Shown here piece by piece: positions 1 to 22,591 of a stretch of DNA of 64,000 nucleotides (position 1 is the stretch's first letter; each line of letters starts with the position of its first letter). A program made the translations under genes and the position numbers. The stretch spans positions 168,684 to 232,683 of the IMG/VR virus record IMGVR_UViG_3300044638_006750; one strand, given 5' to 3'. Under the pieces are notes generated by a model. That model worked only from the letters and a program-made list of their open reading frames with translations, ran no database searches and was not told the DNA's origin.

Positions 1-558
1 TGCTTTCTCAAAAATATTTAAAAGTATATCATGACATTTTCTAATCTCCCACTTACCAATAACAGAGAATATATATTTGTCTGGTTTATTTGTAATTTTA
101 TTAACTAGCGTATGATCGAATATGGAAGTATCAACACCCAATGGAACAACCGTTATAGGTGTTTTGATGCTATATTTATTCACTAATATATCTTTAGCCC
201 AATGACTAGCAACATATACATGATCACAGCAACGGAAATTATGTTGTTCAATATTTGTTATTGTATCTAATTCAAAAAATGGGAAAACCCTATATTCGCC
301 AGATCCTATGCGAGAAGCTAAATCCCAAGCGTGCCATATCTTGAGAGATACAGCTTTGTGATTATAACTATTTCTATTTTCTAGAGCTTGTTCTATAAGA
401 GGTATTTTGTTCTGATTTATAGCTATGGGTTGGCCAATAGGAAATAGTGAAGTTTTTACACCCCGCTCCATAAGAGCCACTAGTATATTACAGCCAGCCA
501 CCCCATATCCTGTGTAAGTTACGGGTGCTTGTAGATTTATTTCTGATAATTTGCTCAC
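1..558 (-). CDS. Glycosyltransferase, GT-B/GT4-like (N-terminal part; runs off the left edge)
   Basis: Not in the ORF track. Manually translated from GTG at 558: MSKLSEINLQAPVTYTGYGVAGCNIL...VVPLGVDTSIF...FSVIGKWEIRKCHDILL, open to base 1. The TGYG, PLGVD and GKWExRK motifs are typical of phage GT4-like enzymes. Confidence 0.75.
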   Translation of the reverse strand, partial: MSKLSEINLQAPVTYTGYGVAGCNILVALMERGVKTSLFPIGQPIAINQNKIPLIEQALENRNSYNHKAVSLKIWHAWDLASRIGSGEYRVFPFFELDTITNIEQHNFRCCDHVYVASHWAKDILVNKYSIKTPITVVPLGVDTSIFDHTLVNKITNKPDKYIFSVIGKWEIRKCHDILLNIFEKA

Positions 559-561
559 TAG

Positions 562-1662
562 TTAGACTCCGAAAATAGGGTTTTTATTAGAATGAATTTG
601 ATTAACTCTACAAAACTGTCCACATTTGATCATATGCTTAATATGTGAGGCGCCAATATAACAGCAGCAAGACCTAATACCTCCTAGTAATTCTTGCACA
701 ACTTTATCTAGAGATCCCCTGTAAGGTATAGTAATTTTTGTCCCCTCTGAGGCTCTATAGCTTTTTTTGCCGTCTTCGAAAATATCTTGTGAATGATGAG
801 TACTCATTCCATAGTATGTGAATCTTCCCTTGCTTTTTTCATCTGTACCAATTACTTTAGAGTAATCTCCACCAAATTCCCATTCTCCCTCACAAGGTTC
901 AGTACCAGCAAAATACCCACCAAGCATCACAAAATCACTTCCTGCACACAATGCTTTACACACATCTCCTACTGTTTTATGTCCACCATCAGAACAGATC
1001 AACCCCAATTTTTTAGGGCCATTTTGAAGACCATGAGCAACATATGAATTTTCTAAAACACAAGATAGTTGCGGTATTCCGCATCCAGTTAAAAATCTGG
1101 TAGTACAAGCACTGCCACCGCCTATACCCGCTTTAACTATGTCTATACCACCATATATTAAAAGTTCTTGCGTTGATGAAGTATTTGTAACATTACCTGC
1201 CATAATAATACTATCAGGAAAACTTTCTCTAACTTTATGACAATATTTAACAAATGCATCCATATGTCCATTTGGAACATCGATACAAATATTTGGTTGT
1301 TTGTGTAATAAATTTTTTAAGTCTAGCAGATAGTTAAGATCGCTTTTTTTATATCCTATCGAAACAAAAGTATAATCAATATTTTGAGGATAATTTGTAA
1401 AATAATCTAGTAGTTGCTGGATTGTGTGATACTTATGTAAACAAGCTATCATTTTATGATTAGCTAGTTGTTTGGCCATTTCAAAAGAACAAAAACTCAT
1501 ATTGGCACACATTATAGGTATGCCCGTCCAATGTCTAGGACTATGATAAAATTGAAAAGTTCTTTCTAGATTAATATCTGATCTACTAGTTAAAGTTGAT
1601 CTTTGAGGAACAATAAGAACATCATCAAAATCTAACTTTGTTTCATTAATAATTTTTTGCAT
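562..1662 (-). CDS. guaC: GMP reductase (IMPDH/GMPR family)
   Basis: KLDFDDVLIVPQRS start, GIGGGSACTTR catalytic-Cys loop, SDGG, YYGMS and YRASEG motifs; no CBS insert. Confidence 0.9.
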   Translation of the reverse strand: MQKIINETKLDFDDVLIVPQRSTLTSRSDINLERTFQFYHSPRHWTGIPIMCANMSFCSFEMAKQLANHKMIACLHKYHTIQQLLDYFTNYPQNIDYTFVSIGYKKSDLNYLLDLKNLLHKQPNICIDVPNGHMDAFVKYCHKVRESFPDSIIMAGNVTNTSSTQELLIYGGIDIVKAGIGGGSACTTRFLTGCGIPQLSCVLENSYVAHGLQNGPKKLGLICSDGGHKTVGDVCKALCAGSDFVMLGGYFAGTEPCEGEWEFGGDYSKVIGTDEKSKGRFTYYGMSTHHSQDIFEDGKKSYRASEGTKITIPYRGSLDKVVQELLGGIRSCCCYIGASHIKHMIKCGQFCRVNQIHSNKNPIFGV

Positions 1663-1665
1663 GTT

Positions 1666-2196
1666 TTATACCGAAAAGAAATACCACCTTTTGTGTGTAT
1701 CAATATTCTCTGAATTATCTATATGAGACAGATAGTTTTTAAGTTCGTCCCAATTAGAAAATATCATTTGGTGAGGTATAGTACCAAATAGCCAGTCCGG
1801 CGTTTGATTCTTACCTTGTTCCATATGTACTATTATGGGTTTTTTTTGTCTATTTGCCCAAAAAATTTCTTCGTATGTTCCACATGGATGAATATCTAAG
1901 TTTAGATTAACAATTAGAAAATCACTAATGTCTACTAATCTCAGATCTACACGACGTATAACCTTCATCATTTCTGCTAGTTCGTCGTATCTTTCAGACG
2001 CCTTTAGCTTTGTTTTTATAATATGAGAATCATTGTCTTCCATACCTGTTGTAGTCGGCTTTGTTATAGGGTTGAATACTACAACACCCTTTTGTTCTAA
2101 AAATGGAGTTATATTATCTCTCCATGTCATACCTCTGTCTGGAACTCTATCCATAGCACCAGCGAGATATACTCTTTGATTCTTTAGTCTATTCAT
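1666..2196 (-). CDS. Nucleoside 2-deoxyribosyltransferase / nucleotide N-hydrolase-like protein
   Basis: VYLAGAM start, DLRLVDISD, GTYEEIFWA with the catalytic Glu, KPII. Confidence 0.7.
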   Translation of the reverse strand: MNRLKNQRVYLAGAMDRVPDRGMTWRDNITPFLEQKGVVVFNPITKPTTTGMEDNDSHIIKTKLKASERYDELAEMMKVIRRVDLRLVDISDFLIVNLNLDIHPCGTYEEIFWANRQKKPIIVHMEQGKNQTPDWLFGTIPHQMIFSNWDELKNYLSHIDNSENIDTHKRWYFFSV

Positions 2197-2249
2197 AGAA
2201 ACACATTAATAAAAAAAGCACAAGAAGAAAAAGTAACATACAACATTAT

Positions 2250-2924
2250 TTATAGGTTAGACCAATCACCATTTAGTTTAGACCATTTGATATGCATAAG
2301 CGTTTCTGAGACACCAAAATAATATGGATTAATCAATCCTCTAAGTTTATTAGATTTAATTGTACTTGAAGCATTGTTGTGATGCTTACATAGTATACCG
2401 GGTGTTTTCTGAATAGTCCAGCCGTTTTTTCTTACACGCTTCATATAATCTATGTCTAAATGATAAAACGGACAACACAACCAGTCCCATTCTCCAACAT
2501 CGCTTAGCATCTCTGTTTTGTATGCACAAAACAAATCTTCATTTTCATTGGCGTCCTGATGAACCCATCCTATTTTTTTAGAGGTGTCACTAAATGATAA
2601 CTTAGCGGCTTCTAGCAGTATATTGTCCCCATTTTCTGTCATAACCTCGCAATCGTTGTGCATAAAGGTTATGAAGTCTGTATTTTCATTAATAGCAATA
2701 AACCTCATCCAATTATAGGTTTGAGCTGTGGTCAATGGTACTGGAGGTCTAATCAGCATGAATCCAAACTCAATATTTTGTCCAATATACTCAGCTAATG
2801 AACCATCATCACTATTGTCTATTAGTAGTGTATTAGGCCATAAATTAGGGACGCTTTTTAAAGCGGATAGGGTTAAATCTGGTCTGTTAACATGCGGAAT
2901 AAAATGAATAAATTTCATAATCAA
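2250..2924 (-). CDS. Glycosyltransferase, GT-A/GT2-like
   Basis: LIDNSDD, FMHND (DxD-like), YHLDIDY, and C-terminal HHNNASSTI. Confidence 0.65.
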   Translation of the reverse strand: MIMKFIHFIPHVNRPDLTLSALKSVPNLWPNTLLIDNSDDGSLAEYIGQNIEFGFMLIRPPVPLTTAQTYNWMRFIAINENTDFITFMHNDCEVMTENGDNILLEAAKLSFSDTSKKIGWVHQDANENEDLFCAYKTEMLSDVGEWDWLCCPFYHLDIDYMKRVRKNGWTIQKTPGILCKHHNNASSTIKSNKLRGLINPYYFGVSETLMHIKWSKLNGDWSNL

Positions 2925-3499
2925 CTATTTTTTTGATTTTGTTTATTATATGTATAGACAAAGACATCATAGTTGCCCCAGATATCTTCAATCAGATCAG
3001 AGATAAAATTCCAATTGCCTCCAGCAATACCAGACCCGAATTTTGGAGTATGTATTTCTATTTTTTGGTTTTCTGATTGTGCTTGAAAATTCTTGATGAA
3101 TTGACCAACAAGAGTCATTGATTTAACTAGTGCCTGATAATTTAAACATCTTCTATGATTTTTATCTGGTAATCCGTTTTGAGCTATCATATTAGCAAAC
3201 ATTAGTTTATAGCCATATTTATTTTTAACCGGAATCTCTATAATTTGTGCGTGTCCAAAATTATTTCTCATAAAGGTTTTACCAAGCATGTGATAATTTT
3301 CTTTTACGATAGGGTAGTGATTAGATACGGCAGCGGCAAAACCTCCGCCAAACACATCTATATTATTACATACATGAGGTACTATGACCGAACTTCCAAG
3401 TTTTTCAGAAGATAGTCTTTTTATTATTCTCTCAAAAATATCGTCATTACTTACTGTGTAAAAAGACCTATGAGATGCGTTGTGGTATTTTGTTTGCAT
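2921..3499 (-). CDS. Macro domain ADP-ribose hydrolase-like protein (TARG1/DarG/Poa1-type)
   Basis: PHVCNNIDVFGGGFAAAV, NMIAQ and TPKFGSGIAGGNW motifs. Confidence 0.8.
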   Translation of the reverse strand: MQTKYHNASHRSFYTVSNDDIFERIIKRLSSEKLGSSVIVPHVCNNIDVFGGGFAAAVSNHYPIVKENYHMLGKTFMRNNFGHAQIIEIPVKNKYGYKLMFANMIAQNGLPDKNHRRCLNYQALVKSMTLVGQFIKNFQAQSENQKIEIHTPKFGSGIAGGNWNFISDLIEDIWGNYDVFVYTYNKQNQKNS

Positions 3500-3560: not shown

Positions 3561-4394
3561 CTAAGACAAAATCTGTTCTATCAGATCGTCAGATATCGCC
3601 ATTTCTTTATCGCTCGGGGAGTAGTATTTAGATTCTTCGTTAATCGTGGTATTATCAAAAATCCTATCTATCCACGTAAAACCATACTGATCCTTGTCAT
3701 ATTGAAGAACTGGAGTAGAATTATGTTCTAAAAAATTTTGATTAGATATTTTTTTCAAAAAATCAAATGATACTTTTTTTTCTAGCCTTTCTGCAATATT
3801 TTTAAACATAGCCATACTTAATATTCTACAAGGGTGGTTATGAGTAGCAAATAATTTTGTTTTTAAAAAATTTTGATTTATAAAATTACTAACATTTTCA
3901 TAACTGTGTTTAATTAATGATTTATCCAATCTATGTTTAGATTGAATGAAACTATTTCTTGTATCTTCAATAGATTTTTTATATATATGAACAATATCGT
4001 ATGCATATAATTCCAGCTCTAAGTTACTCATTCTAATTTCTTTTAGGTCTGAAATGTCAAATGTTTCAAAAAAGTTATTTGGAATATTTTTGTCTGTATT
4101 TAAAATTTGATAATTTTTTATAGTTTCTGTAATAATTAAATCTGTTTTCTGTAAAATGTTACGAATATCAGAGATCGGAAAAAGATAATTTTTCTCTGCA
4201 TTCCATTTCTGTCCCCAAAACGGAGTATAAATACAATAAATGTTAAACTCTGGAAAAAGTAAACTTAAATAATACATTATTGGAGTTGTTCTACAGCTTC
4301 CCAAAAATAAAATATTTCTAGGTCCACACCCTTTATAAATCATGAAATTATTGCTAGCATTTAATTCACTAAGTTTCGCAGCGAGTATTATCAT
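3561..4394 (-). CDS. WcbI-like polysaccharide biosynthesis protein
   Basis: FLGSCR near the N-terminus and LFATHNHP, resembling the GNCQ...F.T.NHP pattern of the WcbI family. Confidence 0.5.
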   Translation of the reverse strand: MIILAAKLSELNASNNFMIYKGCGPRNILFLGSCRTTPIMYYLSLLFPEFNIYCIYTPFWGQKWNAEKNYLFPISDIRNILQKTDLIITETIKNYQILNTDKNIPNNFFETFDISDLKEIRMSNLELELYAYDIVHIYKKSIEDTRNSFIQSKHRLDKSLIKHSYENVSNFINQNFLKTKLFATHNHPCRILSMAMFKNIAERLEKKVSFDFLKKISNQNFLEHNSTPVLQYDKDQYGFTWIDRIFDNTTINEESKYYSPSDKEMAISDDLIEQILS

Positions 4395-5038
4395 TGAATT
4401 AAATTTAAAATTTCTTTATATTTGTTTGTTTTTAAAGTATTACAACTTGATGATGAGAAGTGTATTAATTTCCCTATTTTTGGATAATTAGCTACAAGAT
4501 TTAAACTTTTATAATCTGTTTTACGGTTAGATAACATAATCATATCTGATGTATGTTCTTTATTATTTATAAGATGAATGTCTATTGGTTTTAGAACCAT
4601 AAATGATTTCAACATATTAAAATAATCTTCAGATCTACCAGACACTACACAAGGGACATGTCCCTGATAAATAGTTAATTCTGTGAAATCAAAAAAATTT
4701 ATATCTTCTTGAAATGTATTATTTATTACATCATAATCAATCATTACTCCTCCTCCTATGTTAGCCATTGCTAACCATCTCATATAACAATGATAGTCGT
4801 AGGACGAAGGATTGATGCTTGGGAATGTTTTTATTATTGTTGAATACTCATTATATAAAGGATGAGACAAAGCGTCTTTTTCGGATATTATCTTCAGTTC
4901 CCATCCATGATTTAGCCAAGATTTTGCACATAGCTCTATTAAAGACTCTTGAGAATATTCTTTTGCAGGCCGATGTTCGATCTCGGGTACAACTTCATAA
5001 TATGTATAGATAATATTATTTTTTGTGCAGTATTGCAT
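4391..5038 (-). CDS. Putative glycosyltransferase (DxD, GT32-like)
   Basis: YMRWLAM...GGVMIDYDV motif; position in the glyco-operon. Confidence 0.55.
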   Translation of the reverse strand: MQYCTKNNIIYTYYEVVPEIEHRPAKEYSQESLIELCAKSWLNHGWELKIISEKDALSHPLYNEYSTIIKTFPSINPSSYDYHCYMRWLAMANIGGGVMIDYDVINNTFQEDINFFDFTELTIYQGHVPCVVSGRSEDYFNMLKSFMVLKPIDIHLINNKEHTSDMIMLSNRKTDYKSLNLVANYPKIGKLIHFSSSSCNTLKTNKYKEILNLIQ

Positions 5039-6266
5039 AGTTATATTTTTCTTTTAGTTCTGTGATCGGCATATTTCTATTCTCTTCACTATTTAAACTT
5101 AAATTAACAATCAATGTTGTATACACATATTGTTTTTTTATATAGTTCCATAATATTTTATTGTGTTTAGATGATTCTCTATCAAAATGATAATGCATTA
5201 CTAATTTAAGCAAATAGTCGTATGGCATGTCTGGACTATGATATTTAATATACTCTGGCATTACAGACTTACAAAACTGCATATATTCCTGAAATAAAGG
5301 ATTTCCAGTAGCATATATAGAAGTTCCTCCATTAATATGGCTATTTAATAAGGACGAATATGATTCATTACTAACGCCATCATACTGAGAACCAGAAATT
5401 AAAAAAGGTTGGGATGAACAGTATTTAACCAGTCTATCTAACCACTTATCAGATAGATAACAGTCGCACTCCAACAATAAGCTAGAGTTGTATTTTCTTA
5501 ACAAATCCATAACTGCAAAGAAAACATAGTTTGGACCCGATTTATATCCGTATAGAGGGATTACATTTTCATCACAATCAGAATTTTTTCCCCAATAAAT
5601 ATCTAAGTCTTGAGGGATATCTAAATAAATAATCTCTAAATGTTTAAATTTGTTTTTTAAATTATTGATACCATTATTGTTTTCATAAAATTGTTGATCA
5701 TATTTTTTATTAGCTATAATTATTAAATCTATATTTTTTGACAAATCGGCATTGGTGTTTTTATCTATCTGGTCTAAGAAATTAAGATATGAGTTATCGG
5801 TAATTTCTTGTTCACCTGTTGCCAGTAAACAAATACATTCTAGGTTATTTTCATAGTGTTTAATGCTATCAAGCGAACAATACTGAGAGATATCTTTAAA
5901 TAATCTAGTATCTTCTTTATTGACTTCAAAATATGACAATATATGATCATTTGTAATTAAAGTTTTATCTATTTCATTAAAATCTTTTTTTAAGTTATTA
6001 ATAATTTGTTTAATATTATGATATTTTTTTTCATATAATTGAATTAGAGTATAATAATACCATTCTGAAAATTCAATATTCTTGCTTTCCAACACTAAAT
6101 TAATTTTTTCATCAATATTATCTATCAGTTCTGAGAGTTTGTAGTATGGCCAAGACTGATTGGGGTTTAAATTAATAGCTTTATATAATAGTTCTTTAGC
6201 TATTTCTGGTTGATTATTTTTAATACACAGCATTGCAGCTTTAGCGTATTCTTCCCAATTATTCAT
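5016..6266 (-). CDS. TPR-like N-terminus plus putative nucleotide-diphospho-sugar transferase domain
   Basis: AKELLYKAINLNPNQSWPYY is TPR-like; SGPN, LLECDC and HINGGTSIYA occur in the C-terminal half. Confidence 0.45.
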   Translation of the reverse strand: MNNWEEYAKAAMLCIKNNQPEIAKELLYKAINLNPNQSWPYYKLSELIDNIDEKINLVLESKNIEFSEWYYYTLIQLYEKKYHNIKQIINNLKKDFNEIDKTLITNDHILSYFEVNKEDTRLFKDISQYCSLDSIKHYENNLECICLLATGEQEITDNSYLNFLDQIDKNTNADLSKNIDLIIIANKKYDQQFYENNNGINNLKNKFKHLEIIYLDIPQDLDIYWGKNSDCDENVIPLYGYKSGPNYVFFAVMDLLRKYNSSLLLECDCYLSDKWLDRLVKYCSSQPFLISGSQYDGVSNESYSSLLNSHINGGTSIYATGNPLFQEYMQFCKSVMPEYIKYHSPDMPYDYLLKLVMHYHFDRESSKHNKILWNYIKKQYVYTTLIVNLSLNSEENRNMPITELKEKYNYAILHKK

Positions 6267-9101: not shown

Positions 9102-9105
9102 ATGT

Positions 9106-10720: not shown

Positions 10721-10722
10721 AA

Positions 10723-12490: not shown

Positions 12491-12511
12491 AGTATTAACA
12501 CCATTAAATTT

Positions 12512-15094: not shown

Positions 15095-15103
15095 TATTTT
15101 TAT

Positions 15104-15661: not shown

Positions 15662-15664
15662 GAT

Positions 15665-15907
15665 CTACCATTTTTCTATAGGACACTTTTGGTCGGCCCA
15701 GGCTAATTTATTTAGAAAATGTTTTTTATTTGATAAATTACAACCACATATGCCACATTGATTATTTACTCTGTCAAAATTTTCACAATATATACAAATA
15801 TTCCATCTTCGATCTATTTCAACCTGGGTTGATTTTGGAAAACCAGCCCATACATGAAACCACAAAGATTTAAGAAAGGTTGTTATTCTTAATAAGAGTA
15901 TCGACAT
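15665..15907 (-). CDS. Small Cys-rich protein (DUF6171-like)
   Basis: R..IC..C......C..CGC...K......CP..KW pattern. Confidence 0.55.
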   Translation of the reverse strand: MSILLLRITTFLKSLWFHVWAGFPKSTQVEIDRRWNICIYCENFDRVNNQCGICGCNLSNKKHFLNKLAWADQKCPIEKW

Positions 15908-16127
15908 TTGTCTGGTTCTTTATAGGATAAAAGTTATTATCTTTATCTAGAGAATATAAGCTAGACTCCTGCACTATAGTATTAGGCTTAAACCAAGATG
16001 CACAGCCATTTTTTAGGTTTATACAATTTTTTTCGCCACTTTTTTTGAAATCTGCTGTTACAATATATAGATTATCTAAATAATTAAAGCAGTCTGCGTG
16101 TTTCAATTCCTCTATGTATTTGTCCAT
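15870..16127 (-). CDS. Hypothetical protein
   Basis: ORF tiles with its neighbours in the operon. Confidence 0.55.
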   Translation of the reverse strand: MDKYIEELKHADCFNYLDNLYIVTADFKKSGEKNCINLKNGCASWFKPNTIVQESSLYSLDKDNNFYPIKNQTNVDTLIKNNNLS

Positions 16128-16137
16128 AAATTAGATC

Positions 16138-16350
16138 TTATCGATTGTACTTTCTCAGTTGTTCTTCCCAATCCTCCCACAGTTCGTCTTGGTTCATGTC
16201 TATTTTTTTAGATTTGAATTCATTCTTGATTTTAATTTTTTTCTTGAATTCCTCATTCTCTTGTTTTTGGATTGGCAAACCCTTTTTCTTAAAAAAATTT
16301 TCTCTTCTTAAAGATTTTCTATCCTCATAATCTTTTTTATTTTTTGACAT
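16138..16350 (-). CDS. Hypothetical basic protein, first gene of the leftward operon
   Basis: GGAG upstream; lies downstream of the promoter at 16402-16429. Confidence 0.55.
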   Translation of the reverse strand: MSKNKKDYEDRKSLRRENFFKKKGLPIQKQENEEFKKKIKIKNEFKSKKIDMNQDELWEDWEEQLRKYNR

Positions 16351-16401: not shown

Positions 16402-16429
16402 ATAGTACACCCAGACTGATGGTTGTCAA
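16402..16429 (-). promoter_or_regulatory. Sigma70-type promoter for the leftward glyco-operon
   Basis: Minus strand TTGACA-16-TACTAT. Confidence 0.6.
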
Positions 16430-16456
16430 TATCTTTTTTGTCTAGATTTTCTTTGC

Positions 16457-16486
16457 TTGACAGAGCTAAAAACGAGCTTATATATT
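16457..16486 (+). promoter_or_regulatory. Sigma70-type promoter for the rightward glyco-operon
   Basis: TTGACA at 16457 and TATATT at 16481 (18 nt spacer); divergent from the previous promoter. Confidence 0.5.
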
Positions 16487-16549: not shown

Positions 16550-18208
16550 ATGCATAATACAACTCTCGTTACGGGTATATGGGATCTTGGTAGGTCTGGA
16601 CTAGAAGAGGGGTGGTCAAGGAAATTTGATCATTACGTAGACCACTTCAAGAGGCTGCTAGAAGCAACAAAAGACACGAATATGTGTGTTTTTATAGATC
16701 CTGAGCACGAAAAGATAGTATGGGATGTACGAGATAAAAGCAACACAGCAGTCATTAATCAATCTGCAAAATCATTTAACAGTAGTTTTTTTCCATTTTT
16801 TGATAAAGTACAATCTATAAGAACCAATCCAGACTGGTATAATCAGGTTGGATGGCTTAAAGAAAGCACACAAGCTAAAATGGAATGGTATAATCCGATG
16901 GTTATGAGCAAAATGTTCATGCTGCATAACGCTAAATGCTATAACATATTCAATACAGACTATTATTTTTGGATAGATGGAGGTATAACTAATACTATAC
17001 ATCCTGGATATTTTTATCATGACAAAGTAATAGAAAAAATAGAACAATTAGTTAATAAATTCTTGTTCGTATGTTTTCCATATGAAACAAATAGCGAAAT
17101 ACATGGTTTTAAGATAGATGCCATGAAAAAATTCGCACAATCAGAAATTGTCAATAGGGTTGCAAGAGGAGGATTTTTTGGTGGACATAAAGAATTTATA
17201 TCATATGCAAATGATATGTATTATGGTCTTCTAAGAGACTCATTGAACGAAGGGTTGATGGGAACCGAAGAAAGTATTTTTACATTAATGACTTATCTTG
17301 ATCCTGAAGTTTTTCAGGTAGAAATGATTAATGATAATGGTTTGCTTGGTACATTTTTTGAAAATGTGAAGGACAATAAAACAGAATTAGCTAAAAGTAT
17401 TAGTCCTAAAAAAGTATCTCATAAAAATAATGATATTATAGTATATATTAATGCTTTCAATTCTCCAGAGCAACTACAAATGGTTTGCGATTCTTTTGAA
17501 AAGAACGATAAAGCCTTTTTAACAGACACTAAAATTTATCTTATTAATAATACCACAAAAGAAGAACTATTTCCTATATACGATAAAATATCAGAAAAAT
17601 ATGGTTTTACAGAAATAAGGAAAGGCAATATTGGGGTTTGTGGAGGTAGGCAACTAGCCGCCGAACACTTCGCTGAGTTGGGTGCAAAATATATGTTATT
17701 TTTTGAAGATGATATGTTGGTTGATAGTGGAGAAAATAGATATTGTAAATTTGGTTTTAGAAAAAATATTAGCAATTTATTAAAAAACTCTATCTCTATT
17801 ATGGATATAGAGAACTATGATTTTTTGAAGTTAACATTTAGTGAGTTTTATGGTAATAATTCAGAACAATGGGCGTGGCATAATGTGCCAGGAGAGAGGA
17901 AAATAGAATACTTTGGAAATATAAAAAAAAGACCACAAACAAAGTTTTCTTCTATAAAAACATTTAACGGTATTCCATATGCAGAGGGAGAGATTTACTA
18001 TTCCAACTGGCCTCATATTATATCTCAGGACGGAAACAAGAAAATGTTTCTAGACACTACATGGGCGCATCCTTTTGAACAGACATGGATGAGCCATATT
18101 TATACATTAACAAGAGAAAACCAAGTTAAGCCTGCAATTCTTTTAGCTAGTCCAATAACACATAATAGGGTGCATTTCTATGAAGCGTCAGAGAGGAAAG
18201 AAAACTGA
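16550..18208 (+). CDS. HtrL/YibB (WlaTC)-like glycosyltransferase fused to a GT-A domain
   Basis: TLVTGIWDLGR, YFWIDGG, GGFFGG and GTEESIFT (HtrL-like); LFFEDDM in the C-terminal domain. Confidence 0.7.
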   Translation: MHNTTLVTGIWDLGRSGLEEGWSRKFDHYVDHFKRLLEATKDTNMCVFIDPEHEKIVWDVRDKSNTAVINQSAKSFNSSFFPFFDKVQSIRTNPDWYNQVGWLKESTQAKMEWYNPMVMSKMFMLHNAKCYNIFNTDYYFWIDGGITNTIHPGYFYHDKVIEKIEQLVNKFLFVCFPYETNSEIHGFKIDAMKKFAQSEIVNRVARGGFFGGHKEFISYANDMYYGLLRDSLNEGLMGTEESIFTLMTYLDPEVFQVEMINDNGLLGTFFENVKDNKTELAKSISPKKVSHKNNDIIVYINAFNSPEQLQMVCDSFEKNDKAFLTDTKIYLINNTTKEELFPIYDKISEKYGFTEIRKGNIGVCGGRQLAAEHFAELGAKYMLFFEDDMLVDSGENRYCKFGFRKNISNLLKNSISIMDIENYDFLKLTFSEFYGNNSEQWAWHNVPGERKIEYFGNIKKRPQTKFSSIKTFNGIPYAEGEIYYSNWPHIISQDGNKKMFLDTTWAHPFEQTWMSHIYTLTRENQVKPAILLASPITHNRVHFYEASERKEN

Positions 18209-19457
18209 TAATTTGATTTTTGTACAGATAGCGTCATATCGTGATCCAGAGCTATTGAATACTCTAAGAGATATGATTAATAATGCTGTACATCCAGAAA
18301 ATCTTAGAATCGGTATCGCTTGGCAGCATAGCGATGCAGACAGTTGGGATAAACTTGATGAATTTAAAGATGATTCTAGGTTTAGAATTCTAGACATCAA
18401 TTACAAAGACTCTAAGGGTGTTTGTTGGGCGAGAAATGCCGTTCAACAACTATATGATGGAGAAAAGTACACCCTACAACTAGATTCACACCATAGATTT
18501 GCAAAAGACTGGGATAAAACTTTAATAGATATGCTAGTAGGACTACAAAAGGAAGGCTATGCAAAGCCCCTTATTACTGCATATATACCTAGTTTTGATC
18601 CAGAACATGATCCGGAAAAAAGGGTTCAAGAACCATGGAAAATGAATTTCGATAGATTCATACCCGAGGGCGCAATATTCTTTTTGCCAGCATCTCTTGA
18701 ATCTTTCAACGATAAGGATAGACCTATTAAGGGAAGATTCTATTCTGCTCATTTTGCTTTTACTGTTGGAGAATTTTGTAAAGAAGTTCCACATGATCCT
18801 AATTACTACTTTCATGGAGAAGAAATTAGCATAGCAGTTAGAGCATATACTCATGGTTATGATATATTTCATCCTCATAAAGTTGTTTGCTGGCACGAAT
18901 ATACTAGAAAAGGCAGATCAAAACAATGGGACGATGATCCTGTTTGGCCTCAAAGAAATAATGATTCTCATATGAGAAACAGAAAGTTGTTCGAAATGGA
19001 CGGATTAACAAATGATATTGATTTTGGTCCATGGGGTTTTGGTAAAAAGCGTACAGTAGCAGATTATGAGAAATATGCAGGTATATCGTTTAAGAAAAGA
19101 GCTGTACAAAGATACACATTAGACCATAAAGAGCCGCCAAATCCAACTTATGCCACAGAAGAAGAATATCAAAAATCATTTCTGAATATCTTCAAGCACT
19201 GTATTGATATTGGCTATTCTCAAGTACCCGAAACAGATTATGATTTCTGGTGTGTTGCATTTAAAGATGAAAATGGTCAGGATCTTTATAGACAAGATGC
19301 TGATGAAGCAGAAATTGCAAGAATGAAAAATGATCCTGATGGCTACTGTAAGGTATGGAGAGAGTTTTCTACAGAAGTTAAACCAAAAAGTTGGGTGGTG
19401 TGGCCTCATAGTAGATCAAAAGGCTGGTGTGATATGATTCAAGGAAATCTTCCGTGA
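18180..19457 (+). CDS. GT60/Gnt1-like GlcNAc transferase (Skp1-hydroxyproline GlcNAcT family) with a C-terminal extension
   Basis: IFVQIASYRD, GVCWAR, LQLDSHHRF, FHGEEI and AYTHGYDIFHP. Confidence 0.8.
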   Translation: MKRQRGKKTDNLIFVQIASYRDPELLNTLRDMINNAVHPENLRIGIAWQHSDADSWDKLDEFKDDSRFRILDINYKDSKGVCWARNAVQQLYDGEKYTLQLDSHHRFAKDWDKTLIDMLVGLQKEGYAKPLITAYIPSFDPEHDPEKRVQEPWKMNFDRFIPEGAIFFLPASLESFNDKDRPIKGRFYSAHFAFTVGEFCKEVPHDPNYYFHGEEISIAVRAYTHGYDIFHPHKVVCWHEYTRKGRSKQWDDDPVWPQRNNDSHMRNRKLFEMDGLTNDIDFGPWGFGKKRTVADYEKYAGISFKKRAVQRYTLDHKEPPNPTYATEEEYQKSFLNIFKHCIDIGYSQVPETDYDFWCVAFKDENGQDLYRQDADEAEIARMKNDPDGYCKVWREFSTEVKPKSWVVWPHSRSKGWCDMIQGNLP

Positions 19458-20455
19458 CAAATATAAGATTTCATAGAATTGATAATAAAGCATGGGGAAG
19501 ATATCACGCTATTTGGTTTAGAAAATTTGCCAAATATCTGGAACAATTTTTCAATGTGGAATGGAAAGATTATTTTGATCCAGATAATCAAGTAGCTTCG
19601 TCAAGACTTGAACTACTAAGTGATATTAGAGGTTTTGATCATAATCCTCCATTAAGCGATGTTGATTGTGTTATAGAAAATTTAGATACTAAAAAATTTG
19701 TAGTATTAACATTTACAGAATATTTTAATTCTTATGTTGTACACTATTTAAAATCCCCCAACTGTCAAAAATTATTATCCGCACACTTCAATTATCATAA
19801 TATTTACTATTGGCTTAAAAGAGATAATTTAGTACACAGATTGCCCGACGTTGCACCTTGGTTTTTTGGTTCTATAGACGAATGGGATGTTGCAAAATAT
19901 AGAAATGTCAGAAATGAAACGCCGGTCGAAGAACAAAATACTGCTTTGTTTTGGAAAGGGTCCGGTATAGGCTCTTATAGAAAAGTTATAGAGATCCTTA
20001 GAGATAGACAAGTTTTAGATACTCAAACACTACCATTTGATCTATACATGACAACCTTGGCGAAACAAAAAATAGCTTTAGCATATTATATGGATTTAGA
20101 TAGGTATACTAACCCATACGACTATCCCGGCGAATTTTGTTATAGAGATATGGAATATTGCGCTTTAGGCGTTCCATTTATAAGAATAGAATATAAAGAC
20201 TGTGTACATAATGGCCTAATACAAAATTATCATTATATTAGTATACCAAGAGAAACAGCATACGGTATTTATGAAAAAAATGGCAATGATGGTGTAGCAT
20301 CATTAATAGAAGATAAGTATAATGAGATTATTCAGGATAACGACCTATTGGCTTATATTTCTGGTAATCAAAAACAATGGTTCGATAATTATGCGATGTG
20401 GCCTAATAGTGCAAAATTAGCTATACAACTAACCGGAATAGATCAATGGATTTAA
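19454..20455 (+). CDS. Hypothetical, possibly glycosyltransferase-related
   Basis: C-terminal YRDMEYCALGVPFI...HYISI resembles GT-B acceptor/donor-half motifs. Confidence 0.4.
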   Translation: MTNIRFHRIDNKAWGRYHAIWFRKFAKYLEQFFNVEWKDYFDPDNQVASSRLELLSDIRGFDHNPPLSDVDCVIENLDTKKFVVLTFTEYFNSYVVHYLKSPNCQKLLSAHFNYHNIYYWLKRDNLVHRLPDVAPWFFGSIDEWDVAKYRNVRNETPVEEQNTALFWKGSGIGSYRKVIEILRDRQVLDTQTLPFDLYMTTLAKQKIALAYYMDLDRYTNPYDYPGEFCYRDMEYCALGVPFIRIEYKDCVHNGLIQNYHYISIPRETAYGIYEKNGNDGVASLIEDKYNEIIQDNDLLAYISGNQKQWFDNYAMWPNSAKLAIQLTGIDQWI

Positions 20456-21327
20456 AAAATCTGACCATAACAACATGTTTGTACTATGACCTGTGCGGCA
20501 CCGAATTCGGAGGCAGAGTTCATCCAAGAAATAAATATTTCTATGGACTAGTATCCATGCTCAAAATGGATTCCTCTATTGTTCTCTATTGTTGGGAAAA
20601 AAATATTCAAGAACTGACAGATTTTATAGTATCTCAGTGTGGACCTGATGCCTTAAATAAAATTAAATTTATACCATATGATCTTTATAAGAGTCCTCTT
20701 TATGGTGTGATAAGAACACTAAAAGATCCAGAAGAGCAAAAAAAGTCTGATAGAACATATGATTTAATGCAAGCAAAATTCTTAATGGTCAAAAATACAA
20801 TTGAGAATAATTTTTTTAATACTGACAATTTCTACTATATGGATGTAGGGCTATCCAGCTCTGCATTATTTCCATTTAAGTATCTGCCAATGAAAGACGA
20901 TCCTATGAAGAAGTGGTCGGATTGTTCTTTGTTTAATAATACATTAGTTGATGGACTTATTAATTTAATAGATCCAAATAAAGTAGTCATGTGGAGAATA
21001 TCTGATTGGTTACACTGGATAGACCCGTCTCATCTTAGATCAACTGTTAGAGAATCCATTATTGGTGGTATATTTGGAGGCAAAAAAGAACCCATGATTC
21101 AATATTGTAATGATATAACAGATAGATTTATTGACATGGTTATTAATAAAAAAACCTTGTATTTGGATGAAGTTATTATGACTATAGAACATAATTTTAA
21201 TCCTGACAAATATAAAAAGGTAGATTTTGATGTATGGTATCATGAAGATAGTGGAGATTGGTGTCAGGCGGCAATAGTGGGTAAGAAAAGTTTTTATAAA
21301 ACATTCGAGGAGCTTAATAACATATAA
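20446..21327 (+). CDS. Second HtrL/YibB (WlaTC)-like protein
   Basis: ITTCLY, AKFLMV, FYYMDVG, GGIFGG and LDEVIMT. Confidence 0.65.
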   Translation: MDLKNLTITTCLYYDLCGTEFGGRVHPRNKYFYGLVSMLKMDSSIVLYCWEKNIQELTDFIVSQCGPDALNKIKFIPYDLYKSPLYGVIRTLKDPEEQKKSDRTYDLMQAKFLMVKNTIENNFFNTDNFYYMDVGLSSSALFPFKYLPMKDDPMKKWSDCSLFNNTLVDGLINLIDPNKVVMWRISDWLHWIDPSHLRSTVRESIIGGIFGGKKEPMIQYCNDITDRFIDMVINKKTLYLDEVIMTIEHNFNPDKYKKVDFDVWYHEDSGDWCQAAIVGKKSFYKTFEELNNI

Positions 21328-21992
21328 TGCAAACTGATCATGTAGGAAGAATATTAAATCCAGAGGGTGGATATTTAGACATTAATGGGAAACCAATAAC
21401 AGGATGCTGTGCTTTTGCAGGGATTACTGCTATGCAACACGAAGGAGCGTTTGAAGTTTTTAGGTCTTTATTAGAGACAGTTAGACCTGCCAGAGTTCTC
21501 GAAATAGGAACCGCTGCTGGGGGTCTATGTCTTTACATCAGGCACACATTAAATACTTTAGGTATGTCTGATGTACCGATTAAAACTTTTGATATCTATG
21601 ATACATCTACACATAGGGTTTTAGAAAAAGAAAATAATTTAGAAGTTATTTATACTAATATATTTAGTAAAGATTATTTAAACTTAGAGAATCCTGATCT
21701 AATAGAAACTTTTATTAAATCAGAAGGTACAACGCTAGTTTTGTGTGACGGAGGAAATAAAATCAATGAGTTTAATCTAGTAGCTCCTATGTTGAAATCT
21801 GGAGATATTATTATGGCTCATGATTATTCTCCAAACCTTGAATATTTTAAAGAACACATAATGAATAAGGTGTGGTGCTGGATGGAGATTCAAGATTCTG
21901 ATGTGCAGCAGGCCGTCGATAGTAATAATTTAGAACCTTTTATGGCAACAGAATTTGCTAATGTTGTATGGTTATGTCGTCGCAAAGTATAA
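21327..21992 (+). CDS. SAM-dependent O-methyltransferase (CmcI/Methyltransf_24-like)
   Basis: LEIGTAAGG, VLCDGG and GDIIMAHDY. Confidence 0.7.
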   Translation: MQTDHVGRILNPEGGYLDINGKPITGCCAFAGITAMQHEGAFEVFRSLLETVRPARVLEIGTAAGGLCLYIRHTLNTLGMSDVPIKTFDIYDTSTHRVLEKENNLEVIYTNIFSKDYLNLENPDLIETFIKSEGTTLVLCDGGNKINEFNLVAPMLKSGDIIMAHDYSPNLEYFKEHIMNKVWCWMEIQDSDVQQAVDSNNLEPFMATEFANVVWLCRRKV

Positions 21993-22591
21993 TATCGGAA
22001 GAAGATTTTGCTTCAGTATGTTCAAAATTAACAGATGTTTTTTTTGTTCAAATCGGTGCTAATGATGGTGTGTCGTTTGATCCGATACATGATCTAGTCC
22101 TTCGTTACAACTGGTCCGGTATTCTTGTGGAGCCAGGAGCAGAAGCTTTTGATGCACTAAAACATAATTATTCTGGACGAAGCAATTTAATGTTTTTGAA
22201 TTACGCTATATCAGACCGTGATGGTTTTGTAGAATTATACTGTGGTACTACAACTCCACACTTTACGCTTGATTTTATAAAAGCAAAACATATGTTTGAC
22301 GTTGAACCCAAAGCCGTAAGAGTACCCTGTATGTCTATGAAGACACTTATGAACCGATATGTTAAAAATAACAAGATCGATATATTACAGATAGATGCCG
22401 AAGGTCATGATCATATCATACTGAACGATATGGACTTTGAACAATACTTGCCAAAGATAGTTAGATTTGAGTATGTTTCTATAGGAGACAAATTTTTAAA
22501 TAATTGCTTGACCAAACTATTACATTTCGGGTATACTGTACATTACAGTTCTGATGGTGCGGACGTTATAGCTATAAGAGAAATTAAATGA
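21968..22591 (+). CDS. FkbM-family methyltransferase
   Basis: VQIGANDG, ILVEP, IDILQIDAEGHD and PKIVRFE. Confidence 0.85.
   Translation: MVMSSQSIISEEDFASVCSKLTDVFFVQIGANDGVSFDPIHDLVLRYNWSGILVEPGAEAFDALKHNYSGRSNLMFLNYAISDRDGFVELYCGTTTPHFTLDFIKAKHMFDVEPKAVRVPCMSMKTLMNRYVKNNKIDILQIDAEGHDHIILNDMDFEQYLPKIVRFEYVSIGDKFLNNCLTKLLHFGYTVHYSSDGADVIAIREIK

What the first reader, a model, noticed from the sequence alone, without database searches (positions are those of the whole stretch)
1..22591. A phage carrying a more than 20 kb, back-to-back double operon for complex glycan synthesis
About 15 GT-like genes, two nucleotide-sugar enzymes (RmlB-like, GME-like), a sulfotransferase, a WcbI-like protein and three O-methyltransferases tile in two operons. 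These are driven from divergent TTGACA promoters at 16402-16486. I recognise no Wzx/Wzy, ABC exporter or priming phosphoglycosyl transferase, which argues against a captured O-antigen or capsule locus. It instead suggests soluble enzymes decorating a phage acceptor such as virion proteins or DNA, as in giant-virus glycosylation. This is the best candidate in the window for an undescribed system: phage-encoded methylated and sulfated glycan armour.
Basis: partly seen in the sequence, partly recalled or inferred. Interest (0 to 1): 0.85.

Follow-up and report, generated by a model that had tools for sequence, protein, structure and literature searches.

The report
Huge-phage protein glycosylation gene cluster
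A roughly 230 kb phage carries about 22 kb of soluble sugar-building enzymes, built around two conserved enzymes that most likely attach strain-specific sugar chains to threonine/proline-rich phage proteins rather than to the host's surface or to DNA.

Summary
Window 1-22968 is a tightly tiled, divergently transcribed gene set in a real phage: rIIA/rIIB are present and the window is the last 64 kb of a 232,683 bp IMG/VR contig. It encodes 9 well-supported and up to 4 weaker glycosyltransferase-like genes. It also encodes a GDP-mannose 3,5-epimerase, an RmlB-like dehydratase, a sulfotransferase and three methyltransferases. There is no polytopic membrane protein.

Comparison shows two layers. 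A conserved pair, a two-domain GT-A enzyme (16550-18208) and a GT60-family enzyme (18180-19457), occurs in 78 viral loci, four cultured jumbo phages and many bacteria. The 12 kb minus-strand operon is a hypervariable, low-GC island.

The GT60-like enzyme has the DxH motif, and its nearest solved folds are mucin-type polypeptide GalNAc-transferases. Thr/Pro-rich proteins, some of them virion structural proteins, lie next to the pair in 20 of 36 phage lineages and 37 of 80 bacterial loci. In the reverse direction, 9 of 120 viral loci chosen only for (TP)5 repeats carry a GT60 gene.

Best reading: cytoplasmic O-glycosylation of phage proteins. The acceptor is not in this window.

Large polymorphic GT clusters in jumbo phages and virion glycosylation are already known, so this is a new variant, not a new kind.

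The parts
1..558 (-). First 186 codons of a GT4-family glycosyltransferase; the full gene is 361 aa and runs off the window start
   Evidence: Translation. The full gene on L110 and on the 178 kb contig carries Glycos_transf_1/Glyco_trans_1_4. It is conserved in relatives (cluster c51).
562..1662 (-). GMP reductase, embedded in the cluster but not a glycan enzyme
   Evidence: PDB 2ble, 2e-80; Pfam IMPDH.
1666..2196 (-). Nucleoside 2-deoxyribosyltransferase-like protein; part of the conserved frame, not a glycan enzyme
   Evidence: Pfam E 4e-6, just below the cut-off. Conserved in 11 related loci.
2250..2924 (-). Weak glycosyltransferase candidate
   Evidence: PHROG 29879 'galactosyl transferase', E 3e-6.
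2921..3499 (-). Phosphatase-like protein; in relatives it lies next to the conserved pair
   Evidence: PHROG 335, E 2e-18. Found in 11 related loci, directly upstream of the HtrL-like gene.
3561..4394 (-). Unknown protein with a sub-threshold WcbI-like match
   Evidence: Pfam E 1.2e-3, 19 bits against a cut-off of 29.2. Homologue at 42% identity in L003.
4391..5038 (-). Member of a large unnamed family with an invariant RW..GG..DxD motif; possible GT-A, not assigned
   Evidence: 1367 relatives. Invariant residues listed. No PDB or HtrL profile match.
5016..6266 (-). TPR domain (about residues 1-140) fused to a GT8/WavE-like GT-A domain
   Evidence: ESM Atlas, by features and by structure. Weak TPR Pfam hits.
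6259..8421 (-). Two-domain glycosyltransferase: a GT4-like domain and a GT2 domain
   Evidence: Pfam Glyco_trans_1_4 at residues 280-396 and Glycos_transf_2 at 463-627.
8418..9101 (-). Sulfotransferase
   Evidence: PAPS-binding motifs invariant in 15 homologues. 7 of 29 homologues carry PF03567. The best PDB profile match is heparan sulfate 2-O-sulfotransferase, aligned over both motifs but with E 0.39.
9106..9858 (-). Unknown protein; on other contigs it travels with a homologue of the next gene
   Evidence: Only 5 homologues, none annotated.
9833..10720 (-). GT-D-fold-like glycosyltransferase
   Evidence: 8 of 20 homologues carry PF22882. The query's own hit has E 0.03.
10723..11505 (-). Weak GT-A candidate with an MGAT2-like N-terminus
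   Evidence: Pfam E 5.5e-4, below the cut-off.
11489..12490 (-). NDP-hexose 4,6-dehydratase (RmlB-like)
   Evidence: TIGR01181, 234 bits, below the equivalog cut-off. PDB 2hun, 5e-50.
12512..13210 (-). DUF7796 protein of unknown function
   Evidence: Pfam 29.8 bits against a cut-off of 27. PHROG 13607.
13203..14150 (-). STELLO/RGP-like GT-A fold protein
   Evidence: ESM Atlas score 0.99. Structural TM 0.95 to viral clusters and about 0.6 to GT2.
14123..15094 (-). GDP-mannose 3,5-epimerase (would make GDP-L-galactose or GDP-L-gulose)
   Evidence: PDB 2c59, 2e-85. Homologues at 52-56% identity lie near TP-repeat genes in 6 of 120 loci.
15104..15661 (-). Class I methyltransferase (Methyltransf_24)
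   Evidence: Pfam E 1.3e-18.
15665..16350 (-). Three small ORFs of 80, 85 and 70 aa; the first has CxxC pairs
16402..16486 (.). Divergent sigma-70-type promoters: minus strand TTGACA-16-TACTAT, plus strand TTGACA-18-TATATT followed by GCAG
   Evidence: Best matches in the region. Conserved in 12 relatives. The extended plus-strand motif is unique in the window.
16550..18208 (+). Conserved core enzyme 1: two tandem GT-A domains (HtrL_YibB-like N-domain and a DxD C-domain)
   Evidence: Pfam. AF2 model with pLDDT 89. Foldseek hits to LH3, COLGALT1, K4CP and PmHS2. Present in 78 viral loci and 4 cultured phages.
18180..19457 (+). Conserved core enzyme 2: GT60-family putative polypeptide HexNAc-transferase
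   Evidence: PF11397, E 9e-75. Invariant D102-S103-H104. AF2 model with pLDDT 93; the top 29 PDB matches are ppGalNAc-transferases.
19454..20455 (+). GT-B-like glycosyltransferase (Glyco_trans_1_2 / RXYLT1_C-like)
   Evidence: ESM Atlas scores 0.95-0.97. Found in 12 related loci by tblastn; its protein cluster spans 18 module neighbourhoods.
20446..21327 (+). Paralogue of the N-domain of core enzyme 1
   Evidence: phmmer E 2.9e-7. Present in 22 related loci and next to the core in XacN1 and RAS14.
21327..21992 (+). CmcI / rhamnosyl-O-methyltransferase-like methyltransferase (weak)
   Evidence: Pfam E 8e-4; NCBIfam NF045824 E 1.4e-4. Present in 25 related loci.
21968..22591 (+). FkbM-family methyltransferase
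   Evidence: Pfam E 2.4e-18; TIGR01444 above its cut-off.
22588..22968 (+). 126 aa protein with a signal-peptide-like N-terminus; last gene of the plus-strand operon
   Evidence: Translation. Found in 8 related loci by tblastn; its protein cluster holds 17 members.

Best explanation
This is a phage-encoded, cytoplasmic protein O-glycosylation system with a conserved core and a variable outer layer.

Shown:
- Two host-type promoters fire in opposite directions.
- The plus-strand operon starts with a pair that is co-inherited across huge phages and bacteria. One member is a GT60-family enzyme with the DxH motif and a fold closest to mucin-type polypeptide GalNAc-transferases. The other is a two-domain GT-A enzyme resembling collagen glycosyltransferases and two-domain glycosaminoglycan polymerases.
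- The rest of the cluster differs between phages whose core genes are about 90% identical.

Inferred:
- The GT60-like enzyme puts the first HexNAc on Thr/Ser of Thr/Pro-rich tracts in phage proteins.
- The two-domain enzyme extends this sugar.
- The variable genes then build a strain-specific glycan. They comprise at least 7 further GT-like genes, GDP-mannose 3,5-epimerase (L-galactose or L-gulose), an NDP-hexose 4,6-dehydratase (6-deoxyhexose), a sulfotransferase and three methyltransferases.
- The likely acceptors are fibre, baseplate or other virion proteins encoded elsewhere in the 232 kb genome.
- The turnover of the island suggests diversifying selection on an exposed glycan.
For: 1. GT60 identity. 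PF11397 hit at E 9e-75. D-S-H is invariant in 36 sequences. The model has pLDDT 93, and its 29 best PDB matches are all ppGalNAc-transferases. GT27 and GT60 share Ser/Thr polypeptide glycosylation and the DxH motif (PMC7185993).

2. Neighbours. Proteins with at least 60% S+T+P over 40 aa make up 95 of 1311 genes in 43 of 80 loci that hold the pair. In rIIA-centred control loci they make up 2 of 421 genes in 1 of 29 loci. By lineage the figure is 20 of 36, with distances of 23-7500 bp.

3. Some of these neighbours are virion proteins. They match tail-fibre, virion-structural or baseplate PHROGs. They include XacN1 ORF325, which lies beside that phage's baseplate genes (PMC5852040).

4. Reverse test. 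Of 120 viral loci picked only for a (TP)5-coding repeat, 9 carry a GT60-family ORF 0.6-3.7 kb away, and 6 carry a homologue of this window's GME. By contrast, only 4 of 50,697 GenBank phage records have the GT60 gene.

5. Bacteria. The pair is adjacent in roughly 35 of 80 loci. 37 of 80 loci have TP-rich ORFs, several of them perfect (PT)n. A PqqD-like peptide-binding protein lies beside the pair in 20 loci, and in Gemmatimonadota it carries a TP-rich tail.

6. Experimental support in a relative. XacN1 has the same core (GT60, carbamoyltransferase, HtrL paralogue, HtrL), and at least two virion glycoproteins were detected in it (PMC5852040).

7. No membrane machinery. All cluster proteins are predicted soluble. 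Among 1388 genes in 80 related loci plus the window, no Wzx/Wzy/ABC/PGT-like polytopic protein was found.

8. One island gene fuses a TPR domain to a GT. TPR domains usually bind proteins.
Against: - No Thr/Pro-rich protein occurs in the 64 kb window or within 10 kb of the pair in this phage's own lineage. The acceptor is therefore unidentified here, and 168 kb of the genome was not seen.
- The control loci for the neighbour test sit in early-gene regions, and many test loci are close relatives. The raw 95-versus-2 contrast overstates independence; the lineage count and the reverse test are the fairer measures.
- The core pair also lives in bacteria, which have no virion. 'Protein' is thus better supported than 'virion protein'.
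- HtrL/YibB, WcbI and RmlB-type genes also occur in LPS and capsule loci. Two-domain GT-A polymerases such as K4CP act on lipid-linked capsule primers.
- There is no direct link showing that the minus-strand island feeds the same glycan as the core.
- No biochemical data exist for any member of this pair.
Confidence: 0.5

Rival explanations
1. Host-envelope remodelling. The soluble enzymes act at the inner face of the membrane on the host's own lipid-linked LPS, O-antigen or capsule intermediates and rely on host flippases and exporters. This would change the infected cell's surface to block superinfection or to stop progeny from sticking to debris. It is the published reading of cyanophage 'LPS' clusters.
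For: - Polymorphic clusters of NDP-sugar enzymes and GTs in jumbo cyanophages are interpreted this way (PMC7824862, PMC12801897).
- The N-domain of the core enzyme belongs to HtrL_YibB, a family named from the E. coli LPS-core region.
- Structural matches include capsule polymerases K4CP and PmHS2 and the wall teichoic acid enzymes TarP and TarS.
- In one Gemmatimonadaceae locus, a Bac_transf priming enzyme and a Wzi-like gene lie within 6 kb.
- There are weak WcbI-like and RmlB-like hits.
Against: - The initiating-type enzyme is GT60/GT27-like, not a polyprenyl-phosphate transferase.
- No exporter, polymerase or priming gene occurs in 80 related viral loci.
- This reading gives no reason for the linkage with TP-repeat proteins, seen in both directions.
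- XacN1 has virion glycoproteins (PMC5852040).
Confidence: 0.2
2. Split function. The conserved plus-strand core glycosylates proteins, while the hypervariable minus-strand island is an independent cassette that modifies another target, such as host polysaccharide or a small molecule. On this view the two only share a promoter region.
For: - The island is absent from L007 and differs completely in other close relatives, whereas the core is constant.
- The island has lower GC (0.27-0.30 against about 0.33-0.37).
- A second, unlinked low-GC glycan-like island exists at 39101-44254.
Against: - Variable GT and methyltransferase genes lie on both sides of the core in relatives, and they come from one shared pool of cassettes.
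- The island's GME has homologues next to TP-repeat genes in 6 of 120 independent loci.
- The divergent promoters are conserved together.
Confidence: 0.15
3. DNA hypermodification. The glycosyltransferases decorate hydroxymethylated bases of the phage genome with an oligosaccharide to block restriction, as proposed for Yersinia phage YerA41.
For: - YerA41 carries a roughly 1 kDa sugar-like group on thymidine and has several GT genes (PMC9023294).
- GMP reductase, a nucleoside-deoxyribosyltransferase-like gene and ThyX lie in or near the cluster.
Against: - No dCMP/dUMP hydroxymethylase, DNA glycosylase-type transferase or T4-like alpha/beta-glucosyltransferase was found in the window.
- The core pair is absent from YerA41: tblastn hits only the XacN1 group.
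- The pair is common in bacterial chromosomes, next to TP-repeat proteins.
Confidence: 0.05

Closest known systems
Mucin-type / GT60 polypeptide O-glycosylation (animal ppGalNAc-transferases GT27; Dictyostelium and Trypanosoma GT60 GlcNAc-transferases)
   Same: Pfam PF11397 membership, the DxH metal-binding motif, and a GT-A fold closest to ppGalNAc-transferases. The genes are also genomically linked to Thr/Pro-rich tracts, which are the classic acceptor type.
   Different: The setting is prokaryotic and viral, and the enzyme is cytoplasmic and soluble. The C-terminal beta-rich domain is not shown to be a ricin-type lectin. No PDB sequence-level match was found. Donor sugar and acceptor are untested.
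Mycobacteriophage virion glycosylation (Freeman et al. 2023, as cited in PMC12619734)
   Same: Phage-encoded soluble glycosyltransferases, and in some cases methyltransferases, that modify virion proteins. The proposed role is shielding or altered recognition.
   Different: There it is a few genes acting on C-terminal tails of the capsid and tail-tube subunits. Here it is about 22 kb with sugar-nucleotide enzymes, a sulfotransferase, a GT60/two-domain GT-A core, and internal TP-rich tracts of large fibre or baseplate proteins as the predicted acceptors. Homology between the two systems was not tested.
Jumbo cyanophage 'LPS / capsular polysaccharide modification' clusters (Iyer et al. 2021, PMC7824862; S-SCSM2R, PMC12801897)
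   Same: Large clusters of NDP-sugar enzymes with many paralogous GTs and methyltransferases, polymorphic between related phages. No experimental acceptor is known.
   Different: No sugar kinase or nucleotidyltransferase occurs here. A conserved GT60 + HtrL-like core and the link to TP-repeat proteins point to a protein acceptor rather than a host polysaccharide.
Giant-virus glycosylation machinery (chlorovirus capsid glycans, mimivirus fibril polysaccharides)
   Same: Virus-encoded soluble GTs, sugar-nucleotide enzymes and methyltransferases act on virion proteins independently of host secretory pathways. The structural neighbours of the core enzyme include pithovirus, moumouvirus and megavirus GTs.
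   Different: The host is bacterial and the virus is tailed. The initiating enzyme family is different. The similarity is one of fold and logic, not demonstrated orthology.
Xanthomonas jumbo phage XacN1 ORF328-334 region
   Same: Full-length homologues of both core enzymes (42% and 48% identity) and of the HtrL paralogue, placed next to baseplate genes and a TP-containing giant protein. Virion glycoproteins were detected (PMC5852040).
   Different: XacN1 has a carbamoyltransferase and only a few accessory genes. It lacks a 12 kb variable island, GME and a sulfotransferase.

Membership tests
CAZy GT60 / Pfam PF11397 (polypeptide alpha-GlcNAc-transferase family) | Significant match to the family profile above the curated cut-off | tested here: met
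   252.8 bits against a cut-off of 21, E 8.8e-75.
CAZy GT60 / Pfam PF11397 | DxH in place of the DxD metal-binding motif (shared by GT27 and GT60; PMC7185993) | tested here: met
   D102-S103-H104 is invariant in 36 aligned sequences.
CAZy GT60 / Pfam PF11397 | GT-A fold nearest to the GT27 polypeptide GalNAc-transferases | tested here: met
   Model pLDDT 93. The top 29 Foldseek PDB matches are ppGalNAc-transferases, E down to 4e-10, TM about 0.5.
CAZy GT60 / Pfam PF11397 | Transfers GlcNAc from UDP-GlcNAc to Ser/Thr/Hyp of a polypeptide | not testable with these tools
   Only indirect evidence: linkage to TP-rich proteins.
HtrL_YibB (PF09612 / TIGR02192) | Match to the family profile | tested here: met
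   Pfam 45.5 bits against a cut-off of 24.1, residues 3-257.
HtrL_YibB (PF09612 / TIGR02192) | Equivalog of E. coli YibB (NCBIfam trusted cut-off) | tested here: not met
   49.5 bits against a cut-off of 264.9. The protein also has a second GT-A domain that the family model does not cover.
Wzx/Wzy- or ABC-dependent O-antigen / capsule locus | Flippase, polymerase or ABC permease, plus a polyprenyl-phosphate priming transferase | tested here: not met
   No Pfam hit of these kinds. No clear TM segment in the cluster ORFs. No polytopic protein over 331 aa among 1388 genes of the related loci.
Jumbo-phage polymorphic glycan clusters (Iyer 2021) | NDP-sugar-modifying enzymes plus several paralogous GT families, differing between related phages | tested here: met
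Jumbo-phage polymorphic glycan clusters (Iyer 2021) | Sugar kinase and sugar-1-phosphate nucleotidyltransferase in the cluster | tested here: not met
   None among the Pfam or NCBIfam hits of the window ORFs.
Phage virion glycosylation (mycobacteriophage type) | GT genes beside structural genes whose products carry S/T-rich acceptor segments | tested here: inconclusive
   Met in 20 of 36 related lineages and in XacN1. Not met in this window or in its own lineage within 10 kb.
Phage virion glycosylation (mycobacteriophage type) | Glycans demonstrated on virion proteins | not testable with these tools
   Only the XacN1 report of at least two glycoproteins (PMC5852040).
Sulfotransferase (PF03567-type) | 5'-phosphosulfate-binding loop and 3'-phosphate-binding RDPxxRxxS motif | tested here: met
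   HIPRCGGSS and RDPVKRVIS. P10, R11, G13, G14, S16, R92, P94, R97 and S100 are invariant in 15 sequences. Both motifs align to HS 2-O-sulfotransferase.
Sulfotransferase (PF03567-type) | Profile score above the curated cut-off | tested here: inconclusive
   19.8 bits against a cut-off of 22 for the query. 7 of 29 homologues carry the domain in precomputed hits.
GDP-mannose 3,5-epimerase | Full-length high similarity to characterised GME | tested here: met
   PDB 2c59 and 8sg0, E about 1e-85 over residues 6-320.
Glycosylated-DNA systems (T4, YerA41 type) | Base hydroxymethylase or other base-activating enzyme together with DNA GTs | tested here: not met
   Only ThyX was found in the 64 kb window. 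The core genes are absent from YerA41. The rest of the genome was not seen.

The most novel reading that the evidence does not exclude
Huge phages and many bacteria share a previously unrecognised 'prokaryotic mucin-type' pathway. A cytoplasmic GT60-family enzyme starts O-glycans on (Thr-Pro)n tracts, and a two-domain GT-A enzyme extends them. In phages, a fast-swapping island of tailoring genes (L-galactose, deoxyhexose, O-methyl, sulfate) then gives each strain's fibres its own glycan coat, analogous to O-antigen serotypes but carried on the virion.
Probability: 0.35. Interest if true: 0.8.

Novelty: new variant of a known kind. Interest (0 to 1): 0.62.

Why it matters
If the reading is right, it gives the many unexplained glycosyltransferase clusters of huge environmental phages a concrete and testable acceptor: Thr/Pro-rich tracts of fibre and baseplate proteins. 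It also identifies a two-gene marker for finding such systems. It would extend mucin-type initiation chemistry (GT27/GT60) to phages and bacteria. It would also suggest that virion surface glycans are under diversifying selection, which bears on host recognition, on defence and grazing pressures, and on how phages behave as antigens. Cultured XacN1-type phages carry the same core, so the idea can be tested at the bench now.

Tried and rejected
- Megablast of 1-23000 against GenBank phages found no match.
- PDB sequence-profile searches gave nothing usable for the GT60-like protein, for the HtrL-like protein (only chance-level hits), or for the 4391-5038 family.
- hhalign of the 4391-5038 family against the HtrL family showed no relation, so that ORF stays unassigned.
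- Pfam at E<=10 and PHROGs left 9106-9858 unexplained.
- Jackhmmer with the Gemmatimonadaceae PqqD protein was contaminated by its low-complexity tail. I used it only as a pointer and reran the search with the tail-less Luminiphilus PqqD. No PqqD-like ORF was found in any phage locus.
- A search for an acceptor in this phage failed. There is no S/T/P-rich ORF in the window. The TP-rich protein of relative L017 has no homologue in this contig.
- I could not establish whether this contig belongs to the 'moraphage' lineage (PMC12619734). One related contig of 306,759 bp (L056) matches that paper's stated maximum genome size, and nothing more.
- I considered and rejected a captured O-antigen or capsule locus, because it has no export or priming genes.
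- I considered and rejected a cellular contig. rIIA/rIIB are present and the record is a viral contig. The tmRNA and tRNA are also seen in other huge phages, so they do not indicate a cell.

Full report
**What is in the sequence**

The window is AT-rich (GC about 0.32) and almost all genes run on the minus strand. The exception is 16550-22968. From 15661 down to 562, seventeen ORFs tile with overlaps or gaps of at most 61 bp. From 16550 to 22968, seven ORFs tile on the plus strand. The roughly 890 bp between the two sets is not empty. Three small minus-strand ORFs fill 15665-16350, which leaves a 200 bp intergenic region. In that region the two best sigma-70-type matches face away from each other. 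They are TTGACA-18-TATATT at 16457-16486 (+) and TTGACA-16-TACTAT at 16429-16402 (-). In an alignment with 11 related phages, both -35 elements and the plus-strand -10 (followed by GCAG) stay conserved while the surrounding sequence diverges. The promoter claim is therefore supported by more than a consensus match.

**Is it a phage?**

Yes. rIIA (30685-33330) and rIIB (29807-30661) match their PHROG families at E 1e-110 and 2.5e-72. ThyX, UvdE, an ATP-dependent ligase, RuvB and an actin homologue follow. The actin homologue's only GenBank phage relatives are 485-595 kb uncultured phages. The window is identical to the last 64 kb of a 232,683 bp IMG/VR contig. A tmRNA and one tRNA are present, but there are no ribosomal genes.

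**Gene content**

Firm assignments:
- GT4+GT2 fusion at 6259-8421.
- RmlB-like 4,6-dehydratase at 11489-12490.
- GDP-mannose 3,5-epimerase at 14123-15094 (2e-85 to the plant enzyme).
- Methyltransferases at 15104-15661 and 21968-22591, and more weakly at 21327-21992.
- An HtrL_YibB-like 552 aa protein.
- A PF11397 (GT60) protein at E 9e-75.

ORFs with no Pfam hit that were resolved by other means:
- 5016-6266 is a TPR domain fused to a GT8/WavE-like GT-A domain.
- 19454-20455 is GT-B-like.
- 13203-14150 has a STELLO/RGP-like GT-A fold.
- 9833-10720 is GT-D-like, judged from its homologues.
- 20446-21327 is a paralogue of the HtrL N-domain.

The sulfotransferase call (8418-9101) rests on motifs. 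Both PAPS-binding motifs are invariant across 15 homologues and align to heparan sulfate 2-O-sulfotransferase.

Weak or open assignments are 2250-2924, 3561-4394 (WcbI hit below threshold), 4391-5038, 9106-9858, 10723-11505 and 12512-13210.

Two genes inside the stated span are nucleotide enzymes, not glycan enzymes. They are GMP reductase and a deoxyribosyltransferase-like protein. The cluster also continues beyond base 1: a GT4 gene is cut by the window edge.

None of the cluster proteins has a convincing transmembrane segment.

**Two layers revealed by comparison**

The 552 aa protein recovered 78 IMG/VR loci at 41-100% identity. It also recovered four cultured jumbo phages: XacN1, Xoo-sp13, CM1 and RAS14. 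The GT60-like gene hits exactly the same four cultured phages and accompanies the 552 aa gene in about 70 of the 78 loci. It is sometimes duplicated. In contrast, the genes of 6259-15661 occur only in the two loci that are the same phage.

A relative whose core genes are 89-92% identical (L003) has a different island. It shares only four genes with this one, at 38-78% identity. Another relative (L007) has no island at all. The island is also lower in GC than the backbone.

I ran a Pfam census of 93 representative variable genes from the relatives. It found GT2, GT10, GT11, GT7, GT31, GT47, GT92, RXYLT1-like, FkbM and TylF methyltransferases, carbamoyltransferase and SDR enzymes. No exporter appeared among the 25 families listed, out of 47 families hit. 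A hydropathy census of 1388 genes in these loci found no polytopic protein larger than 331 aa.

**What the core enzymes look like**

The 552 aa protein models with pLDDT 89 as two tandem GT-A domains. W141-x-D143-x-G145 and E386-D387-D388 are invariant. Its best solved matches are human LH3 and COLGALT1, which are collagen glycosylation enzymes, and the two-domain polymerases K4CP and PmHS2. Its viral matches are giant-virus and phage GTs.

The GT60-like protein models with pLDDT 93. Its 29 best PDB matches are all polypeptide GalNAc-transferases. It carries an invariant D-S-H. This is the DxH variant that, according to PMC7185993, marks GT27 and GT60, the families that share Ser/Thr polypeptide glycosylation.

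**The acceptor**

The bacterial scan found 417 relatives of the GT60-like gene. The two-domain gene lies beside it in roughly 35 of the 80 loci kept, including isolate genomes and megabase contigs. Annotated contexts are as follows:
- Jiulongibacter has the XacN1-like order: GT60, carbamoyltransferase, FkbM-HtrL.
- In a Neisseriaceae genome the pair sits inside a type VI secretion cluster.
- In Gemmatimonadaceae and Luminiphilus a PqqD-like protein lies beside the pair.

A PqqD-like ORF lies next to the pair in 20 bacterial loci. In Gemmatimonadota it ends in a long TPTPT/ST-rich tail.

This led me to scan for such tracts. In loci holding the pair, 95 of 1311 genes in 43 of 80 loci have at least 60% S+T+P over 40 residues. 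In 29 rIIA-centred control loci the figure is 2 of 421 genes. Collapsed to lineages, 20 of 36 have one, and several lie within 23-400 bp of the pair. These proteins include a collagen-like tail fibre and a virion structural protein. They also include proteins matching baseplate-wedge and virion-structural PHROGs, and XacN1 ORF325 and its RAS14 homologue. In XacN1 the module lies beside the baseplate genes, and the authors detected at least two virion glycoproteins (PMC5852040).

In the bacterial loci, 37 of 80 have T-containing STP-rich ORFs, several of them perfect (PT)n proteins of 800-950 aa.

As a reverse test I scanned IMG/VR for a (TP)5-coding repeat. Of the first 120 loci (1.14 Mb), 9 hold a GT60-family ORF 0.6-3.7 kb from the repeat. 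Another 6 hold a 52-56% homologue of this window's GME. Only 4 of 50,697 GenBank phage records carry the GT60 gene at all.

**Limits**

This window has no S/T/P-rich protein, and neither do the 10 kb flanks in its own lineage. The remaining 168 kb of the genome could not be read, so the acceptor in this phage is inferred, not seen. The control set is small and sits in an early-gene region. Many loci are near-duplicates, which is why I rely more on the lineage count and the reverse test. Because the pair also exists in bacteria, 'protein acceptor' is better supported than 'virion acceptor'. Nothing directly ties the minus-strand island to the same glycan, apart from the shared conserved promoter region, the shared cassette pool and the GME/TP-repeat link.

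**Comparison with what is known**

Large, polymorphic clusters of sugar-nucleotide enzymes and glycosyltransferases in jumbo phages have been described and read as host-surface modification systems (PMC7824862). A cyanophage with 13 GTs is on record (PMC12801897). Virion glycosylation is established for mycobacteriophages (cited in PMC12619734) and giant viruses. A DNA-linked oligosaccharide is proposed for YerA41 (PMC9023294). A recent survey of large aquatic phages lists four core GT orthogroups without assigning a target (PMC12619734).

In the searchable library I found no description of three things. These are the GT60-like plus two-domain GT-A pair, its linkage to TP-repeat proteins, and the core-plus-hypervariable-island layout. 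That search does not cover subscription journals.

**Verdict**

The claim of an entirely undescribed system is too strong. I rate it a new variant of a known kind, of moderate to high interest, because it offers a testable acceptor and cultured phages in which to test it.

Noticed in passing
window 48606-48960 (-) and 36425-36510 (-): A full-length tmRNA (Rfam 119.6 bits; tag peptide GANQLALAA) and a tRNA-Leu(taa) are encoded by the phage.
   Followed up: no
window 25016-26017 (-): An actin-fold protein matches the Volactin family (E 1.9e-63). Its only GenBank phage relatives are two uncultured huge phages of 485 and 595 kb, at about 34% identity. It is conserved in 15 related loci.
   Followed up: partly
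window 39101-44254 (-): A second glycan-like island with very low GC (0.24-0.28). It holds a DUF1796 papain-like protein, a 384 aa Methyltransf_24 fusion, a 632 aa protein with a weak GT2_4 hit and a 421 aa unknown. Its clusters contain only this phage.
   Followed up: partly
window 47346-48593 (-): A strong DUF1501 protein (E 1.7e-101) lies directly beside the tmRNA. From memory, this family belongs to the sulfatase/alkaline-phosphatase superfamily, which would be notable in a phage that also encodes a sulfotransferase. I did not test this.
   Followed up: no
window 22971-24657 (-): A subtilase and a trypsin-like protease (with an N-terminal hydrophobic segment) converge on the plus-strand operon. 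They are conserved at this position in about 20 relatives. In some relatives the trypsin slot holds a Cys-rich, TP- or PPS-rich 520 aa protein instead.
   Followed up: partly
window 22588-22968 (+): The last gene of the plus-strand operon encodes a 126 aa protein with a signal-peptide-like start (MKIISWSFIFLLMFSNAYS). It is the only apparently exported product of the cluster.
   Followed up: no
window 562-2196 (-): GMP reductase and a nucleoside-deoxyribosyltransferase-like gene sit between glycosyltransferase genes and form part of the conserved frame in relatives. In a distant relative (L036) an IMPDH-family gene lies directly after the HtrL-like gene.
   Followed up: partly
window 15665-15907 (-): An 80 aa ORF with two CxxC pairs (zinc-ribbon-like) is the third gene downstream of the minus-strand promoter, after the 70 aa and 85 aa ORFs.
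   Followed up: no
L193 10001-12226 (Neisseriaceae bacterium TC5R-5): A GT60-like gene and an HtrL-N-like gene lie inside a type VI secretion gene cluster (TssF, TssG, ImpA, a fimbrial-like protein, DotU, OmpA). This suggests glycosylation of a component of another contractile-tail-like machine.
   Followed up: no
L194 9386-9967; L125, L127, L129, L130, L132, L136 equivalents: Gemmatimonadota PqqD-like proteins next to the GT60/HtrL pair carry long TP/ST-rich C-terminal tails. In other phyla the PqqD-like partner is only about 90-115 aa and lacks the tail.
   Followed up: partly
left of window start (contig about 158-168 kb; L110, L111): Beyond the GT4 gene lie a ferritin-like protein, a sigma-70 region-4-like protein and a ClpP protease.
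   Followed up: no
L050, L051, L053 and several loci: Contigs labelled as giant-virus MAGs (GVMAG) carry the HtrL-like gene or TP repeats. They may be huge-phage contigs binned as giant viruses.
   Followed up: no
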